From: Thecamonas trahens ATCC 50062
Lineage: Eukaryota > Protista > Apusomonadida
Direction of reading: 5' to 3'
Length of the DNA: 64,000 nt
Assembly: GCF_000142905.1 (NCBI RefSeq)
Contig: NW_013657622.1
Span: 124,001-188,000, forward strand
Within the stretch, counting starts at the first letter, position 1; each line of letters starts with the position of its first letter. Positions 2,468 through 13,627 of this stretch are shown piece after piece. A program made the position numbers and the translations under genes. Under the pieces are notes generated by a model. That model was not told the DNA's origin, did no database searches, and saw nothing but the letters and a program-made list of their open reading frames with translations.

Positions 2468-3460
2468 ATGTTCCGTCTCTCGACAATTGGGACGGCAGGG
2501 CTTGCGCGGGTCACGGGTATGTGAGGGGGGGTGGGAGGGGGGGGGGGGGGCGGGGGGAACAGGGTGGCTCACAGCGGGCGCGGTGGCTGGGACGGTGGCT
2601 GTGACGGACGGTGGCTGTGACGGACGGTGGCTGTGACGGACGGTGGCTGGGACGGTGGCTGGGGTGGCGATGGGCTTGGTGGCGGGTGGATAGGCATGGT
2701 GGCGGCGGCGACGTCGTGGAAAGTGGCTGGCGTGGCGGCGGCCCGGGGCATGGCGGACTTGCCGTACTGGGACGACAGCTCGTCGCAACTGCCTGGGTGG
2801 GAGGAGGAGCAGTCGCGTGGTGGCGGTGGTGGGTATGGAGGCGGCCGGAACGGCGGCGGCGCGGCGAGTGGTCGGGCTTACGGCGGAAGCGGCGGCGGCG
2901 ATGGGCAGCCTGTGCACAACGCGCGGTATGCGCTGTACAAAGCGACCAAGAGCGAGATGCGAGGGGCGGCTGTCCAGTTCTCGTACTCGTTCACGGCAAA
3001 GGCTATGTTTGTCGAGGGTGCCAAGCAGGCCGGCGACAAGCTGAGCCCGGGCGCCTCGGGCCGGCAGTTTGACTGGGACAACAAGGTCGTCATCAAGCTC
3101 TCGGTCACCGAACTCGGCAAGATGCTTGCTGTCATCGACGGCAAGGCGCCTGAGGCCTCGTTCTTCCACTCGATCATGCCGCGCGGTGACGGCGGCGGCA
3201 GCAGCGGTGGAAAGATCCAGTCGAAGCTCGACTTTAAGGACAACGAGACCAACTACATCCTCGGCATTTCGCGGCGGACTGGCGACCAGCCGGCCCAGTC
3301 GCTCGGCCTGTACGTCGACATCGGCGAGGCCCAGGTGCTGCGAGTCGTGCTTGAGGCTGCCATCAAGGACGCGGCGGGTTTTGAGCCCGATGCGACTGTA
3401 CGGCAGAGCACAGGGCAGCGCGGGGCGGTGCCTACACAAAGTCGATCGAGGCTTGCATAA
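2468..3460 (+). CDS. Whirly-family ssDNA-binding protein with a mitochondrial presequence; join(2468..2516,2694..3460)
   Basis: Intron gtatgt...tag at 2517-2693 joins in frame to give MFRLSTIGTAGLARVTGMVAAATSWKVAGVAAARGMADL. The domain has RQFDWDNKVVIKLSVTELG and ASFFH, versus plant WHY RQYDWSRKQVFSLSVTEIG and CEFFH. Confidence 0.8.
2581..2661. repeat. Intronic minisatellite (GACGGTGGCTG(T/G), 12-16 bp units)
   Basis: About 6 tandem copies inside the Whirly intron, next to G tracts. Confidence 0.85.
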
Positions 3461-6391
3461 ATGCTGACCGCGAGAGCGCGCTCGCGGAAGTCGCCGAGGC
3501 TTGGCGGACAATCGGAACCTCGTCCGACGCCATCGAGTACGTGTACGTCTCGTCAAAGCACGAGCCCGAAGTCACATCCGACGTCGAGTACGAGTACCGC
3601 GAGTAAGAGACGGCGTTCCGAGGCCCGCGACCAAGCTCAGAGGTTGAGGTCTCCGACGAGACTGGCGGCGTCACGCCGCGGCGGAACGGCTGCGGCTGCG
3701 GCGCTGGCGAGACTGAGCTGTCGTCCCGCTCCGAGTAGTAGCTGTAGTACGACGACGACGCAAAGTCCCGAGTGGCGACGCGGGCCGGTGCGCGCGGCGC
3801 AGCCTCCTTCTCGTCGTAGTACTCGTACGACGACGATGCGTCGGCCATAGGCGGGCCAAGAGCAATGACGCCATCAGCAGGCGCGGCGGGAGCCTCGGGC
3901 TCGGGCTCGGCTAGTGGCGGCGGCATCATGATGATCACTCCGTCACCGGCGGAGGCCGCGCTCTCGGACGACATGTCCGAGACAGGCGGAGGCGGCATCA
4001 TGATGACAACGTCGCCGGAAGCGATGGCGGCCCGCGAGTCGGACTCTCCGGTGTACTCGCTCGTCTGCGAGTCGTAGAGCGACGAGGTCTCGCGCGATGC
4101 GCTGTTCTCGTCTTCCGCGGCGGCGGCGGCGGCGGCCATGGCCGCGCGCGTCGACGCGTGAATGGTGACGGTCTTGATGTTGCGGAGAGCGTCGCGCTTG
4201 GCCTGGGCTCGGGCAGCCGCGATGCGCTGCAGCCGCTCGCGGCCTTGGGCATCGGAAGCCAGCGTAGCCTTGATGTAGAGATAGATGTTGGAGATGCCCA
4301 TACCGACGACAATGCACATGACGTAGCCGTTGACAACGCCGACCACAGCAGCCCGTGCCGGCGCACCCTCGGCGGCGATAAATGCTCCCAGGACGCAGAG
4401 CCCGAGCAGCGCAGGAATGAGCGCAAGCTCGGAGAGCACGAGCCGCGCCACTGCGTTGGAGTAGTACACCCGCGTAAAGTGGGCCATTGTCCGGCTTCGG
4501 GTGTACGGGTTCGCCTCCTTCTCAAACCGTCTCACAAGCGCCTGGGTCCGCTGCCGGTAGCGGTTGACATGGTGCAGCGGTGCCTTGAGTACAACCTCGT
4601 AGACAAGGCCAGCAACGGCGAGGCCGAGCGGGGCGGCCCACGGCAGAAAGTCGCCATCGACAACGTCACCGAGCTTGATGAACACGCCGCCAAGAACGAG
4701 GACACGCCAGAGCCACGACGACCAGAGGTAAAGGTAGTAGCCAAAGCAGCCGAGGCCAAGGTTACGCGGGTACGGCATGGCGCCGCCAACAGCTTTGCCG
4801 TCACGGAGCTTCTGCAGTGCACGGATGTACTTGAGCTCGGTCTTTGAGTAGCCAGCCGCGGTGGCGTTCTCTACAGCGTTGATGAGCTCGGCGAGGGCAA
4901 GGACGGCAAACGGCATCCACGGCTTGATGGCGTCGGGCGAGCCGTCGGCGGCCATGGCGATGAGGACCAGGGCCACAAAGAGGCAGACACCGCGAGCAAA
5001 GCGCTTCCAAGTGAAGAGGCGGGCCACCTCCCACGGCCCCTCGTACGGTGTCTTGGTTCGGGCGCGGGCCTTGGCTTTGGCCTTGGCGCGAGCCTTGGCC
5101 TGGGCCTTGACGGCCTTGGCCCGGGCCTTGGCCGCGCGCTGGGCGCGAGTTCGCGAATCACTTGTCTTGGCCGCCTCCTCCTGCTCCTCATGCTCGCTCT
5201 CGCTCTCCGCGTTGGCGTCAGCGGCGGGGCTGGCGGCCCCGTCGGCGCCGCCGCTGCGTTCCGCCTTGCGAATCTTGGCCTCGGTCTGCAGCCGATAGGC
5301 GCGCTTGTTGTGGCGGGTCACCGAGCCGCGGTAGCAGAGGTAGCACAAAACAACGGCAAGCCAGAAGAGCACAAGTAGCAGCGCCGGGATGAAGCCGGCA
5401 GTGTACGACGCCGAGTCTTTGGCAACGGCGGTGCCAATAAACGCCGATGCAATGAGAAAGGGGACTACGATGCAGAGCGTCGACGGCACGATGTAGCACA
5501 TGACAAGAGGCAACGAAAAGGCCGGATGGCGGAGCCAGATGGGCCGCGGGTAGCCCTTGCGGGCAAGGCGCTCGTCATCGGCAGCATCGCGGGCGTCCTC
5601 ATCTCCTCGAGCATGGTCTTGTGTTGGTGAAACTCGACGCCACCGGCGCCGTACTTGTTGTACACCGTCCTTAGCTGCGGATTCGACAGCACGTCGTACG
5701 CCTTGTGAACAAGTTCGAACATGGCCGTCCCGCCCGCGTTCTTGTCGGGATGATATCGCAGTGCCATCCGACGAAACTGTTTCTTGATTTCGGAATCGCT
5801 TGCCCGCAGCCCGACTCCCAGAATCTAGTTGAAGTTGGCGGTGTGAGACAGTTGTGTGGCATGACAAGGGATGAGGTTGATTGTGGCGTGAGTAGTTGAG
5901 CGGGAGTGTCGCTCATGGTTGCCATTGCAACCGCACCCTGCAGCGATCAGCCGTGCCAGACCCGCGCCCTGCAGCGATCAGCAGCACCCGACCCGCGCCC
6001 AGCAGCAATCAGCAGCACCCGACCCGCGCCCAGCAGCAATCAACTCAAGTCATCCAACCTCGTGCGGCCCATTCCCCACCCACCACCGCATCAGGACGAG
6101 ACCTCCCCCGCCCCACTCCCACCACCGTTGGCGCCTGGCAGCCATCGAGACAGCGGCCATGCCACCACAGCCAGTGCAAGCTGAAGCAAGTACGCTGTAT
6201 CCCCCCACCGCAGCCCATCAGCAGCACATTCCCCAGAATCAAAGGTTGCCACCCCCCTCCCCCCCCCCTTCCCTTCCCCCCCCCCCCCCCCCCCCGTCCC
6301 CGACTCGTACCTCGTAGAACCGCATGTTGTCGATGATGGGAGGCAGCTCAGACTGCTCCCCAGGCATGGCTGACCCTTGCTGCTCCGCCAT
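3432..6391 (-). CDS. DnaJ (J-domain) multi-pass membrane protein; exon 1 6391..6311, exon 2 from 5824; one apparent frameshift near 5600
   Basis: Spliced ...NMRFYE|ILGVGLRASDSEIKKQFRRMALRYHPDK...KAYDVLSN (HPD motif). One added base joins this to the 3432..5867 frame, which has about 8 hydrophobic segments and a Ser/Tyr-rich tail. Intron gtacga...tag. Confidence 0.75.
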
Positions 6392-10022: not shown

Positions 10023-10643
10023 TCAGAGGAGCGGGTCGGCGTCGGGGTGCAGCGGGTTCTTGACGACGTTGAGGCATGCCTTGAAAGCCGGGCTCTTTGC
10101 GTCGCGGATGAGCTCGTAGATGAGCGACTGCGAGGTGGTGACGACGACGCCTGCGGCGCGCATGCGGTCGAGGGCGACGTTGCGGTCGTAGAGACGCTGC
10201 GAGCCGATGCCGTCGGCAAGGGCGTGGACGGTGTAGCCGCGATCAACGAGGTCGAGGGCGGTCTGCTGGACACAGATGTGACCCTCGAGGCCCATGAGGA
10301 CCACATTCTTGACCTCGGGCAGATCGTCGGCGAGGAGGGCCTCGACCTCGGGCGTGACCATGGAGAACAGGGTCTTCTCGAACGAGCGGACAAGAGTGCC
10401 GTCGTCAAGATCGGCGGCGGCGCCTGGGGCTGGGAGATCAAGCTCTGCGGCAGTGTGGCCAAAGGCCTTGGGATACTGCTCGGTGACGACGACAGGCACC
10501 GAGAGGGCCGACGCGGCACCGAGCATGGTGTGGGCGACCGAGACGACCGAGTCCCAGTTGGCCACCAGTGGGCGGAAGGTCTCCTGAATGTCGCAAACAA
10601 AGACCGCTGTCCGGCCGAGTCCTGCACGAGCTGCCATGGCCAT
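10023..10643 (-). CDS. Isochorismatase domain-containing protein (ISOC1/2-like)
   Basis: FVCDIQETFRP, VTEQYPKAFGHT, KTLFSM, GLEGHICVQQTALDL motifs. Start at ATG 10643; the upstream part of the 569-aa ORF is translated minisatellite. Confidence 0.9.
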   Translation of the reverse strand: MAMAARAGLGRTAVFVCDIQETFRPLVANWDSVVSVAHTMLGAASALSVPVVVTEQYPKAFGHTAAELDLPAPGAAADLDDGTLVRSFEKTLFSMVTPEVEALLADDLPEVKNVVLMGLEGHICVQQTALDLVDRGYTVHALADGIGSQRLYDRNVALDRMRAAGVVVTTSQSLIYELIRDAKSPAFKACLNVVKNPLHPDADPLL

Positions 10644-10706
10644 GCGAGCTGTGGGGAGATGTGTGGGGTGGGCTGCAGGAGGAAGGGGGTGGGGGGCGGG
10701 GGAGGA

Positions 10707-11404
10707 ACGATTAATTGAACGAGAGAGTGTTGATTGTTGGGGCGGACGATTAATTGAACGAGAGAGTGTTGATTGTTGGGGCGGACGATTAATTGAACGA
10801 GAGAGTGTTGATTGTTGGGGCGGACGATTAACTGAACGAGAGAGTGTTGATTGTTGGGGCGGACGATTAATTGAACGAGAGAGTGTTGATTGTTGGGGCG
10901 GACGATTAATTGAACGAGAGAGTGTTGATTGTTGGGGCGGACGATTAACTGAACGAGAGAGTGTTGATTGTTGGGGCGGACGATTAATTGAACGAGAGAG
11001 TGTTGATTGTTGGGGCGGACGATTAATTGAACGAGAGAGTGTTGATTGTTGGGGCGGACGATTAATTGAACGAGAGAGTGCTGATTGTTGGGGCGGACGA
11101 TTAACTGAACGAGAGAGTGTTGATTGTTGGGGCGGACGATTAATTGAACGAGAGAGTGTTGATTGTTGGGGCGGACGATTAACTGAACGAGAGAGTGTTG
11201 ATTGTTGGGGCGGACGATTAACTGAACGGGAGAGTGTTGATTGTTGGGGCGGACGATTAATTGAACGAGAGAGTGTTGATTGTTGGGGCGGACGATTAAT
11301 TGAACGAGAGAGTGCTGATTGTTGGGGCGGACGATTAATTGAACGAGAGAGTGCTGATTGTTGGGGAGAAACGATTAATTGAACGAGAGAGTGTTGATTG
11401 TTGG
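10707..11404. repeat. 39-bp minisatellite, about 18 near-identical copies
   Basis: Unit ACGATTAA(T/C)TGAACGAGAGAGTG(T/C)TGATTGTTGGGGCGG arranged head to tail with no spacers. Confidence 0.97.
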
Positions 11405-11609
11405 AGGGGCGAGTGTTGATCAATGATGGTGGCAAGGCCTGGTTGCACGATTGGAGATGCACGCGACAAGGACGATGCGACAGGCAGGCGAGGGAGGAGA
11501 CGGAGACTGAAGGGAGGCGGACACTTGTCGCTGAGACGTAGACAGTGAGCTGAGGATGCATGTGCGTGTGCGTCTCGGGAGAGAGCATGTGTGGCCAGAC
11601 CTGCCCGGC

Positions 11610-13627
11610 ATGGCCCTCCTTACCATTACCACCCTCCTGGCCCTTGCCCTTGTCCTCCCTCGCCCCGTCACCGCCACCGCCTCGGTCGACTGGGCTGCCT
11701 TTGGCATCGGGCCCGGCGAGGATGTGGCCCAAGCCGTAGCTATGGACGAGAACGATGTCGTCTATGTTGTCGGTATGTCATGCCTCCCTCCCCCCCCCCC
11801 CTTGCAGTGGCAGCGCGAGTGGCCTGTCGTGTGGCTGGCGCTGCGCGGACGGGCAGGGCAGTCCAGGGTGTGTGACGCATGCTTGTCCTGGCCATGATCA
11901 CACGCACGCCCTGTGGTGGTGTCTACCCCCCCCTCCCCCCCCCCCCCCCCTCACCCACATGCCCTCACCCCCCTCCCCCACTCTTGCCACAGGTACCTTC
12001 CACAAGTCCATGACCATCCAGTCGCACTCGATCTACTCTACCCTCTCCACCACGGTCGAAGACGATCCGACAGCCGCCGGCTACGGTGAGATGTTTGTCG
12101 CCGCCTTTGATCCTGACGGCACGTACCTCTGGGCCGTCTCGTCGGCCGTCACCGCCGGCTCTGGCCATGGCCTCAAGCTCTCGGCCGCAGAGGCGACCGT
12201 CAAGTCGGGCAACGCTCTGTACATCACGGGCGTGCTCTCGGGCGAGGCGGTGCTCGGCGACTTTACTCTCAACTCGCCCGACCCCGCCGACCCAGTTGTT
12301 GTCCTTATCAAGGTCGTGCCGCAGACGGGCGTCATTGAGTGGGCCACGTCGGCAGAGATCGAGACCTTTGGCGGCCGTGTGGGCATGACGTACAACCCGG
12401 ACAACCAGGTCGTCGCCCTCACCTCGTACATCCGCTACAACGCTACCTTTTACGCCGTCAAGGAGCCGGGCGCCCCCAGGACGAGGTCGTCCTCTCGTGC
12501 CCGGTTGTTGAGCAGACGTCGGAGACCTGCGCCGTCGTCGTCGTCTACAACAACCTCGGTGGCATCACCCTTACCGAGCTTGTCCCGCCTGTAACCGCAA
12601 AGTCGTGGATCATCCCCACAGACATCGTTTACTCCTCTACCGACACCACCTACTTCTTCACCGGCTCGATGGTCGGCTGTGTCACCTTTGACGCCTCAAT
12701 CGGCCATACCTGCGTCCCGGGCGTCGGCCAGGAGGGCGTCTTCCTTGCCCAGTACCACTCCTCGTCCGGCAAGTTTGTCTCGGCCCAGGCCTACAAGACC
12801 GGCTCGGCAACCAACACCGACCTCGGCACATCGGTCGACGTCGATGAGTCCGGCAACCCAGTCGTGGTCGGCACCTTCCGCGACGTCGCCAACTTTGGCT
12901 CCATCTCGGTCATTGGCACCCCAACGCCTGGTCCGCCTTTATCTTCAAGTACCACACCGTCGAAGGTTCCGTCCTCTGGGCTGAGGCCGTCGCCTCAGAC
13001 GGCTCAGACATTGGCGCCGGCGTCCACGTCACCCCGCAGTCTCGCGACGTCATGTTTGTCGGTATCGTCTCGGGCTCGGTCGAGATCCAGGGCGTGCCCG
13101 TCAACGTTTCCAAGGGCGTGGTCCTCGCCCAGTTTGACGGCGACACCGGCGACCTTGAGTTTGCTCAGGTCCAGCAAGGCACCCTCTACTCGACTGACTT
13201 TGCTCTTGCCCGCACCCAGCCGGCCGGCGGCGCTCCGCTACCCATGGTCCTCGTCGGCGGCTTCCTCAACGAGACCGCAAACGTCTTTGACGTCGCCATC
13301 ATCCACTACGGTGACACTCCGCTGCCCCCGGCCCCGCCCTCGCCGCCCACCACCACCGCCGTATCAACCGCGTCTTCGACCGGTACCGCCGCCTCGCCCC
13401 ACCACCACGAGCACGTCGCCGTCGCCGTCGCCGTCGTCTTTGGCCTCGCCCTCCTCGTCGGCGGCGCCATCCTCGGCTTTATCTACCGGCGCCAGTCCTC
13501 GGGCAACTTTCCGCATCAGCGCCTCGACGACCAGGGCCGCCTCCCGCCCTCGGCTCGCTCCGCAAACATCGATGCCTCGCTCTCGGGCCCGGCCGCTGCC
13601 GCCAGCTCCATGTACGGCGCCCTCTAA
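11610..13627 (+). CDS. Type I membrane protein with SBBP-like beta-propeller repeats; intron 11773..11992; apparent frameshifts at ~12475 and ~12920
   Basis: Signal peptide MALLTITTLLALALVLP; blades DVAQAVAMDENDVVYVVG|TF, DLGTSVDVDESGNPVVVGTF and DIGAGVHVTPQSRDVMFVG; Pro/Thr stalk; TM VAVAVAVVFGLALLVGGAILGFIY followed by RR. Confidence 0.75.

What the first reader, a model, noticed from the sequence alone, without database searches (positions are those of the whole stretch)
2468..3460. Mitochondrion-targeted Whirly ssDNA-binding protein in a non-plant eukaryote
Seen: an exon missed by the ORF track (2468-2516) splices in frame to give an Arg/Ala/Ser/Thr-rich, acid-free presequence ending ARG-M-A. 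A Gly-rich linker and a Whirly domain follow (RQFDWDNKVVIKLSVTELG; YKATKSEMRGAAV in place of the plant YKGKAAL). Established: Whirly proteins are described as plant and green-algal organellar nucleoid proteins. Neighbouring RasGEF and dynamitin genes indicate the host is not a land plant. Inference: this is either an ancient mitochondrial nucleoid or repair protein that predates plants, or a horizontal acquisition that gained an intron and a targeting signal.
Basis: partly seen in the sequence, partly recalled or inferred. Interest (0 to 1): 0.8.

Follow-up and report, generated by a model that had tools for sequence, protein, structure and literature searches.

The report
Mitochondrial-type Whirly protein in Thecamonas

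Summary
Exon 1 (2468-2516) joins exon 2 (2694-3460) in frame across a GT..AG intron. The product is identical to the public 271-aa model AMSG_10476 of Thecamonas trahens ATCC 50062, an apusomonad.

The Whirly call is solid:
- Pfam PF08536 scores 35 bits against a cut-off of 23.
- An AlphaFold model (pLDDT 93.8) has the beta4-alpha-beta4-alpha fold.
- It aligns to plant WHY1/2/3, PBF-2 and trypanosome MRP1/2 at Z about 17. The next fold scores 7.7.

The gene is single-copy and under purifying selection (dN/dS 0.14 against a 79%-identical marine relative).

It is not a plant-derived transfer. Its nearest relatives (37-41% identity) are proteins of other protists (Amoeba, Arcella, Difflugia, unnamed eukaryotes), many with mitochondrial-type leaders, interleaved with short proteins on phage-like contigs. 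Green-algal Whirlies form a separate long branch. Micrarchaeota also carry the family.

Mitochondrial targeting is inferred only: 37 N-terminal residues have no acidic residue and a net charge of +4. Supporting context is that no canonical SSB was found in the genome, while a bacterial-type RecA was.

This is a new member of a known family. Databases already tag it, although the literature calls Whirly plant-specific. The scan's notes hold no earlier report of this gene.

The parts
2468..2516 (+). Exon 1: start codon, first 16 codons of the leader and the first base of a split Gly codon
   Evidence: identical to the N-terminus of public protein P0001. It is the first ATG in this frame (the upstream ORF 2261-2524 has no ATG before it).
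2517..2693 (+). Intron, 177 nt, GTATGT...AG, holding a G run (2525-2557) and four copies of a 16-nt tandem repeat (2590-2655)
   Evidence: The exon-1 frame hits TGA at 2522-2524 if unspliced. The public model removes exactly this stretch.
2694..2749 (+). Start of exon 2: rest of the presequence-like leader, up to the candidate processing site ...AARG/MAD
   Evidence: no acidic residue in the first 37 residues of the precursor, net +4 over the first 35; Arg at -2/-3 of the proposed site. Targeting itself is inferred.
2756..2905 (+). Short acidic/aromatic stretch, then a Gly-rich (GGY/RGG-like) low-complexity linker
   Evidence: The marine relative (L002/L003) also has a Gly/Tyr-rich stretch before the domain.
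2906..3391 (+). Whirly domain (162 aa): beta4-alpha-beta4-alpha
   Evidence: Pfam PF08536 hit at 3041-3346. AF2 model pLDDT 93.8. Foldseek and VIA-align top hits are MRP1/2 and plant Whirlies, Z 16.5-17.4, rmsd 2.2-3.1 A over 133-142 residues.
3392..3460 (+). 22-residue C-terminal tail and the TAA stop; the last 29 nt overlap the stop-proximal end of the convergent minus-strand ORF 3432-5867
   Evidence: The tail is absent from the marine relative, which stops right after the last helix.

Best explanation
The gene (AMSG_10476 of Thecamonas trahens) encodes a 271-aa precursor with three parts: a basic, acid-free leader, a flexible Gly-rich linker and one Whirly domain. Shown: the gene structure, family membership, the fold, single copy and purifying selection. 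Inferred from characterised homologues: the leader directs import into the mitochondrion, where it is cut near ARG/MA. The domain assembles into a four-fold 'whirligig' tetramer. The tetramer binds single-stranded DNA, and possibly RNA, without sequence preference along the edges of its beta-sheets. There it would coat single-stranded stretches that arise during mtDNA replication and break repair, and steer repair away from microhomology-driven rearrangement, as plant WHY2 does. It would work beside the bacterial-type RecA that this genome also encodes. It may stand in for the canonical mitochondrial SSB, which was not found in this genome. It belongs to a subfamily shared with amoebozoan and other protist proteins, many with mitochondrial-type leaders, and with proteins on phage-like contigs. 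This subfamily is distinct from the plant and green-algal clade.
For: Family and fold: Pfam Whirly 35 bits against 23. PDB sequence hits are WHY3, PBF-2 p24, WHY1 and StWhy2, sharing the block RQ[FY]DW..K.V..LSVTE.G and FFH. AF2 pLDDT is 93.8. Z is 16.5-17.4 to MRP1/2 and the plant Whirlies, with the next fold (PUR-alpha) at 7.7. Real, constrained gene: single locus in the genome; 79% identical marine relative with dN/dS 0.14. Mitochondrial reading: the leader is free of acidic residues for 37 residues, net +4 over the first 35. The organism has no plastid (established knowledge). Many protist homologues have 46-120-residue N-extensions with a classic presequence look, e.g. P0016 Amoeba proteus, P0009, P0004, P0015, P0033. 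Characterised structural kin WHY2 and MRP1/2 are mitochondrial (PMC3245945, PMC7549692). Context: no PF00436 SSB in the genome even at E 10; bacterial-type RecA at 425 bits. Placement: a starred clade (95) of protist and phage-type sequences, apart from green-algal Whirlies (100) and the archaeal group.
Against: No targeting predictor, proteome or localisation data were available. The leader has a low amphipathic moment (0.34), and an Ala/Gly/Arg-rich N-terminus is partly expected in a 65% GC genome. The land-plant KGKAAL motif, needed there for ssDNA binding and 24-mer assembly, is replaced by YKATKSEMRGAAV. The missing SSB could be a miss of the six-frame, exon-by-exon search. Tetrahymena TIF1, another non-plant relative, is nuclear (PMC2377264). 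MRP1/2, equally close in fold, bind RNA.
Confidence: 0.6

Rival explanations
1. Nuclear single-stranded-DNA factor. The protein acts in the nucleus at replication origins, telomeres or promoters, like Tetrahymena TIF1 or nuclear plant WHY1, and the N-terminus is not an import signal.
For: TIF1 is a nuclear distant homologue outside plants (PMC2377264). Plant Whirlies also act in nuclei (PMC9070903). The leader's amphipathic moment is weak.
Against: The precursor has 37 acid-free, net-positive N-terminal residues, and many protist homologues carry presequence-like extensions. No NLS-like cluster is evident in the sequence.
Confidence: 0.15
2. Mitochondrial RNA-binding or annealing factor. The tetramer binds RNA like kinetoplastid MRP1/MRP2, helped by the RGG/GGY-like linker, and acts in transcript processing rather than DNA maintenance.
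For: MRP1/2 are tied with plant Whirlies as top structural matches (Z 17.4). A profile of this subfamily reaches T. brucei MRP1 by sequence (E 2.6e-6). Two members of the hit set touch Pfam MRP. Gly/Arg-rich linkers are common in RNA-binding proteins (general knowledge).
Against: The protein itself matches Pfam Whirly and not MRP at E up to 1. No MRP-family locus is found in the genome. No RNA editing of the kinetoplastid kind is known to me in apusomonads.
Confidence: 0.15
3. Recent horizontal acquisition from a plant or green alga, or algal contamination of the assembly.
For: The literature describes the family as plant-specific.
Against: Plant PDB Whirlies score only about 25 bits, while protist and phage relatives score about 100 bits. 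Green-algal Whirlies form a separate clade with 100 support. The gene has the host's 65% GC and a spliceosomal intron, and lies between RasGEF and dynamitin genes on a 227-kb contig.
Confidence: 0.02
4. A claim about origin, not function. The apusomonad gene came from a phage independently of the other protists, so the family was not inherited from an early eukaryotic ancestor.
For: The best non-apusomonad hit, P0003 (37%, 101 bits), lies among tightly packed overlapping small genes. Two groups with phage contexts (the P0017 and P0053 groups) sit inside the same starred clade. An AU test rejects a single clade of the 14 proteins with long N-extensions (p 0.006).
Against: The AU grouping was chosen after seeing the tree, and some 'short' rows nested among protists may be truncated eukaryotic ORFs (P0020, P0050). 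Most inner branches are unresolved, the tree is unrooted, and the direction of any transfer is unknown.
Confidence: 0.25

Closest known systems
Plant mitochondrial Whirly WHY2 (StWhy2, AtWHY2; PDB 3N1H, 4KOP)
   Same: Both belong to Pfam family PF08536 and share the beta4-alpha-beta4-alpha fold (Z 16.8-17.4, rmsd 2.4-2.8 A). They share the RQ[FY]DW..K...LSVTE.G block and the FFH motif. Both are nuclear-encoded with an N-terminal leader, and both are single-domain proteins of similar size.
   Different: Sequence identity is only about 20%, and plant proteins score about 25 bits in direct search. The KGKAAL motif is replaced by a longer YK-x7-GAAV loop. A Gly-rich linker is present. The host is a plastid-less heterotroph. 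In trees the protein sits with protist and phage sequences, not with Viridiplantae.
[quoted passage not shown]
   Same: Same fold, tied for best structural match (Z 17.4). Both are mitochondrial. The subfamily profile detects MRP1 by sequence (E 2.6e-6).
   Different: MRP1/2 form a heterotetramer of two paralogues and bind RNA for editing. Thecamonas has a single gene, and its protein matches Pfam Whirly, not Pfam MRP.
Tetrahymena thermophila TIF1
   Same: A non-plant protist protein described as a distant Whirly homologue that binds single-stranded DNA (PMC2377264).
   Different: TIF1 is nuclear, acting at the rDNA origin and the S-phase checkpoint.
Uncharacterised Whirly-like proteins of uncultured tailed phages and Micrarchaeota
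   Same: They are the closest sequence relatives outside apusomonads (30-40% identity over the whole domain). The family-wide residues Y11, G20, A22, Q41, F55, W57 and H88 are shared.
   Different: These are leaderless proteins of about 150-170 aa encoded in phage nucleotide-metabolism clusters or in small archaeal genomes. None has been characterised. There is no PHROG family and no match in cultured-phage records.
PUR-alpha / PC4-like superfamily
   Same: The same general beta-beta-beta-beta-alpha repeat architecture that binds single-stranded nucleic acids (PMC7549692).
   Different: A much weaker match (Z 7-8, rmsd 5 A) with no sequence similarity; this is not the family.

Membership tests
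Whirly (Pfam PF08536) | Sequence match to the family HMM above the curated gathering score | tested here: met
   35 bits against a cut-off of 23, E 1.5e-8, profile positions 37-135 of 136; 36.7 bits for the domain alone; 35.9 bits in the six-frame genome search.
Whirly (Pfam PF08536) | Two four-stranded antiparallel sheets, each followed by a helix (beta4-alpha-beta4-alpha) | tested here: met
   AF2 model pLDDT 93.8 with strands and helices in that order. Z 16.5-17.4 to WHY1/2/3, PBF-2 and StWhy2; Foldseek E 1e-7 to 1e-8.
Whirly (Pfam PF08536) | Conserved core motifs shared with plant proteins (RQYDW..K..F.LSVTE.G; FFHD) | tested here: met
   The HMMER alignment to WHY3 and PBF-2 p24 shows these blocks aligned to RQFDWDNKVVIKLSVTELG and FFH. 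F55, W57 and H88 are nearly invariant or invariant in the 102-sequence alignment.
Whirly (Pfam PF08536) | KGKAAL motif of land-plant Whirlies (ssDNA binding; second Lys needed for 24-mer assembly) | tested here: not met
   The sequence reads YKATKSEMRGAAV. The family consensus outside plants is YKPxKxxxGxAxQF. The motif is also absent from green-algal and Marchantia Whirlies according to PMC9070903, so it defines land-plant members, not the family.
Whirly (Pfam PF08536) | Homotetramer with four-fold 'whirligig' symmetry | not testable with these tools
This needs SEC-MALS, a crystal structure or a multimer prediction.
Whirly (Pfam PF08536) | Binding of single-stranded DNA | not testable with these tools
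   Needs EMSA or fluorescence anisotropy with the recombinant domain.
Whirly (Pfam PF08536) | N-terminal organelle-targeting peptide | tested here: inconclusive
   The leader is free of acidic residues for 37 residues, net +4 over the first 35, rich in Ala/Ser/Thr, with a candidate R-2/R-3 site. Its amphipathic moment is low (0.34), and no trained predictor was available.
Kinetoplastid MRP1/MRP2 (Pfam PF09387) | Sequence match to the MRP HMM | tested here: not met
   Only Whirly is reported for this protein at E up to 1. There is no MRP locus in the genome at E up to 1, although that search had no positive control. The fold is shared, and the subfamily profile reaches MRP1 at E 2.6e-6.

The most novel reading that the evidence does not exclude
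A Whirly-type tetramer, related to a phage ssDNA-binding protein, was an early mitochondrial nucleoid or ssDNA-binding protein of eukaryotes. It survives as plant Whirly, kinetoplastid MRP1/2 and the presequence-bearing proteins of apusomonads and Amoebozoa, and was lost on the line to animals and fungi. In Thecamonas it would be the main mitochondrial ssDNA-binding protein in place of the bacterial-type SSB, working with a mitochondrial RecA. That would add one more phage-derived part to the mitochondrial DNA machinery.
Probability: 0.25. Interest if true: 0.7.

Novelty: new member of a known kind. Interest (0 to 1): 0.45.

Why it matters
Plant biologists treat Whirly proteins as plant-specific guardians of organelle genomes. 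A bona fide family member with a mitochondrial-type leader in an apusomonad, the sister group of animals and fungi, argues otherwise. So do similar proteins in amoebae and their close relatives on phage-like contigs. Together they suggest the Whirly tetramer is a much older and more widespread solution for handling single-stranded organelle DNA.

[quoted passage not shown] If Thecamonas truly lacks a canonical mitochondrial SSB, it would be a natural system for asking whether a Whirly protein can do that job.

The practical value is modest. Databases already tag the protein, and the function is inferred.

Tried and rejected
- **Single-sequence AF2 fold.** pLDDT was 45.9, so it was unusable. 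It was replaced by the model built on the alignment.
- **Word-based homologue searches.** The searches with the 102-sequence profile and with a Trebouxia Whirly gave few named proteins. As a result no land-plant sequence could be placed in the trees; green-algal Trebouxia proteins, 62-75 bits to the plant PDB Whirlies, stood in for Viridiplantae.
- **The search for related loci.** P0003 and P0017 found nothing in IMG/VR.
- **Cultured phages.** There was no PHROG family and no tblastn hit in GenBank phage records. The phage assignment therefore rests on gene neighbourhoods, the ESM Atlas taxa and a BFVD hit named 'Whirly transcription factor [uncultured Caudovirales phage]'.
- **Transcript evidence for the splice junction.** No contig encoding exactly P0001 is on record.
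- **A third exon at 3460-3610 (+), with an acidic/aromatic frame.** Rejected. The public model ends at 3460, the marine relative stops right after the last helix, and that stretch lies inside the convergent ORF.
- **Identity of the eukaryote behind P0009.** The Atlas machine was busy.
- **Literature.** Searches found no paper describing Whirly in apusomonads or Amoebozoa, and no account of the family's range outside plants. The search that also named Plasmodium, Toxoplasma, diatom, Phytophthora and Chlamydomonas was swamped by papers lacking the word Whirly, so it tested nothing.
- **P0014 context.** I first read it as bacterial. Its named close relatives are Micrarchaeota MAGs.

Full report
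**Observation**

The + strand at 2468-3460 holds a two-exon gene.
- Exon 1 (2468-2516) starts at the first ATG of its frame. It encodes 16 residues plus the first base of a Gly codon.
- The intron (2517-2693) begins GTATGT and ends AG. If it is not removed, the frame stops at 2522-2524.
- Exon 2 (2694-3460) completes the Gly codon and runs in frame to TAA.

Exon 2 and the domain were searched by reference. The first search returned the public protein P0001, [quoted passage not shown], 271 aa. So the exon is real in the sense of the public model, and public annotation had not missed it. I found no transcript contig to confirm the junction.

**Host**

The window is 61-68% GC and lies in a 28.7-Mb assembly. 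The Whirly gene's own product is the named Thecamonas protein. Earlier notes of this scan also name Thecamonas. From established knowledge, Thecamonas is an apusomonad: a heterotrophic flagellate, sister to opisthokonts, with mitochondria and no plastid.

**Is it a Whirly protein?**

Yes, on four lines of evidence.
- **Family model.** Pfam PF08536 matches at 35 bits against a curated cut-off of 23 (E 1.5e-8). It is the only such locus in the genome.
- **Solved structures by sequence.** A search of PDB sequences finds AtWHY3, potato PBF-2 p24, AtWHY1, StWhy2 and AtWHY2. The blocks RQ[FY]DW..K...LSVTE.G and FFH align.
- **Predicted fold.** A single-sequence fold was poor. With a 102-sequence alignment of relatives (A1), AlphaFold2 gave pLDDT 93.8 and the order beta4-alpha-beta4-alpha.
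- **Structural matches.** Foldseek's top hits are T. brucei MRP1/MRP2 and the plant Whirlies (E 2e-9 to 3e-7). VIA-align gives Z 16.5-17.4 at rmsd 2.2-3.1 A over 133-142 residues for both groups. The next fold, PUR-alpha, scores only 7.7.

The land-plant KGKAAL motif is not present. The sequence reads YKATKSEMRGAAV, and the consensus of the non-plant relatives is YKPxKxxxGxAxQF. According to PMC9070903, green algae and Marchantia also lack KGKAAL. The motif therefore marks land-plant members rather than the family.

**Relatives**

An exhaustive HMMER search of 1.84 billion representatives with the domain found 156 proteins at E up to 1e-3.
- **Closest relative.** P0002 is 79% identical and lies on two short marine metagenome contigs, one of them from Tara Oceans project PRJEB4352. 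Against it dN/dS is 0.14, so the gene is under purifying selection.
- **Next tier (about 37-41% identity, 80-100 bits).** Some of these are 200-420-aa proteins with long N-terminal extensions. Others are leaderless proteins of about 150-170 aa.
- **Named or placed eukaryotic members.** These are Amoeba proteus, Arcella intermedia and Difflugia compressa (EukProt), an unnamed EukProt protein, and a cluster (P0009/P0154) lying between Yippee, ARPC4 and ribosomal S6e genes, which is a eukaryotic genome.
- **Leaderless members on phage-like contigs.** Several sit in tightly packed contigs with dUTPase, ribonucleotide reductase, dCMP deaminase and ThyX (P0053; P0017; P0151).
- **Independent viral and bacterial pointers.** The ESM Atlas lists look-alike clusters from Uroviricota, Verrucomicrobiota and Streptophyta. 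BFVD holds a "Whirly transcription factor [uncultured Caudovirales phage]".
- **Archaeal group.** Another group belongs to Micrarchaeota MAGs. 6 of 61 sampled genomes of that phylum have a hit above the cut-off.
- **Plant proteins.** They score only about 25 bits with the Thecamonas domain, which would be far above E 1e-3 in the big library. Green-algal Trebouxia Whirlies appear near the bottom of the list (P0143, 36.9 bits). They match plant PDB Whirlies at 62-75 bits, so they can represent Viridiplantae.

73 of the 102 aligned hits match Pfam Whirly. A profile of the alignment reaches plant Whirlies at E 3e-14 and T. brucei MRP1 at E 2.6e-6.

**Trees**

Two quick maximum-likelihood trees (LG+C20 PMSF, SH-aLRT support) agree.
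- Thecamonas and P0002 are sisters (support 95-97).
- They lie in a starred clade (support 95, 33 rows) made of the protist proteins with N-extensions and the short phage-context proteins.
- That clade is apart from the Micrarchaeota-containing group and from a long green-algal branch (support 100).

This excludes a recent transfer from plants or algae. It does not settle whether the protist genes share one origin. An AU test rejected a single clade of the 14 proteins with long N-extensions (p 0.006). However, the grouping was chosen after seeing the tree, some "short" rows may be truncated eukaryotic ORFs, most inner branches are unresolved, and the tree is unrooted.

**Likely function**

Shown: a constrained, single-copy nuclear gene for a Whirly-fold protein with a leader and a Gly-rich linker.

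Inferred:
1. **Mitochondrial import.** The first 37 residues have no Asp or Glu. The first 35 hold 4 Arg/Lys, 9 Ala and 6 Ser/Thr, and ARG/MA could be an R-2/R-3 processing site. Many protist homologues have classic-looking presequences. The cell has no plastid. The caveats are a low amphipathic moment (0.34) and a GC-rich genome, which favours Ala, Gly and Arg anyway.
2. **Tetramer formation and non-specific ssDNA binding.** This is by analogy with StWhy2 and PBF-2 (PMC3245945, PMC7549692).
3. **A role in mtDNA replication and repair.** Two pieces of genomic context fit. The six-frame search found no canonical SSB (PF00436) even at E 10, while 10 of 14 control genomes matched. It found a bacterial-type RecA at 425 bits in GC-rich, host-like sequence. 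An intron-split SSB could have been missed, so the absence is a lead, not a result.

Rival readings are a nuclear TIF1-like role and an MRP-like mitochondrial RNA-binding role. The fold ties with MRP1/2 and the linker is RGG-like, but the protein matches the Whirly HMM, not the MRP HMM.

**Novelty**

The plant literature calls Whirly plant-specific and notes Tetrahymena TIF1 as a distant homologue. Searches that paired Whirly with apusomonad, Amoebozoa, Acanthamoeba, Dictyostelium and related terms found no paper describing the family there. Two further searches on other protists and on the family's range outside plants were uninformative. Databases, however, already attach PF08536 to this very protein and to phage and bacterial proteins.

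I rate this a new member of a known kind. It belongs to an undescribed protist/phage subfamily that links plant Whirly and kinetoplastid MRP1 by sequence. It is of moderate interest for the evolution of mitochondrial DNA maintenance.

Noticed in passing
G000:C71:65961-66743 (+), locus L006 1519-2550: A bacterial-type RecA (Pfam RecA 425 bits) sits in GC-rich, host-like sequence. The ORF begins inside the conserved N-terminal region, and a run of N lies upstream, so a leader exon may be missing from the assembly. It is probably the mitochondrial RecA.
   Followed up: partly
whole genome G000: No match to the canonical SSB family PF00436 in six frames, even at E 10, while 10 of 14 control genomes matched. 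Either the mitochondrial SSB is absent or it is split into small exons.
   Followed up: partly
alignment A1 against PDB: A profile built from the protist, phage and archaeal relatives detects both plant Whirlies (E 3e-14) and T. brucei MRP1 (E 2.6e-6). [quoted passage not shown]
   Followed up: partly
L004 1305-1784; L013 2538-3038; L014 2333-2803: Leaderless Whirly-like proteins of about 155-166 aa occur on phage-like contigs, next to dUTPase, ribonucleotide reductase (one with a LAGLIDADG intein), dCMP deaminase and ThyX. They have no PHROG family and no relative in cultured-phage records or IMG/VR by the searches tried. They look like an uncharacterised phage ssDNA-binding protein family.
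   Followed up: partly
L016, L017, L018; genomes G001-G063: Whirly-family proteins occur in Micrarchaeota (DPANN archaea) MAGs. 6 of 61 sampled genomes of the phylum have a hit above the Pfam cut-off.
   Followed up: partly
window 2525-2557 and 2590-2655: The intron of the Whirly gene holds a 33-nt G-rich run and four near-perfect copies of a 16-nt unit (GGACGGTGGCTGTGAC).
   Followed up: no
window 3432-3460: The last 29 nt of the Whirly coding sequence overlap the end of the convergent minus-strand ORF 3432-5867. That ORF encodes a multi-pass membrane protein with only a sub-threshold PFF1_TM match.
   Followed up: partly
window 2816-2905; L002 1-110: A Gly-rich GGY/RGG-like linker precedes the Whirly domain both in Thecamonas and in its marine relative, and Arcella has a similar stretch. 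Plant Whirlies are not described with such a linker. It may add RNA binding or condensation behaviour.
   Followed up: no
window 10026-11732 (-): An ORF with an isochorismatase domain and a weak Spartan-like zinc-binding match.
   Followed up: no
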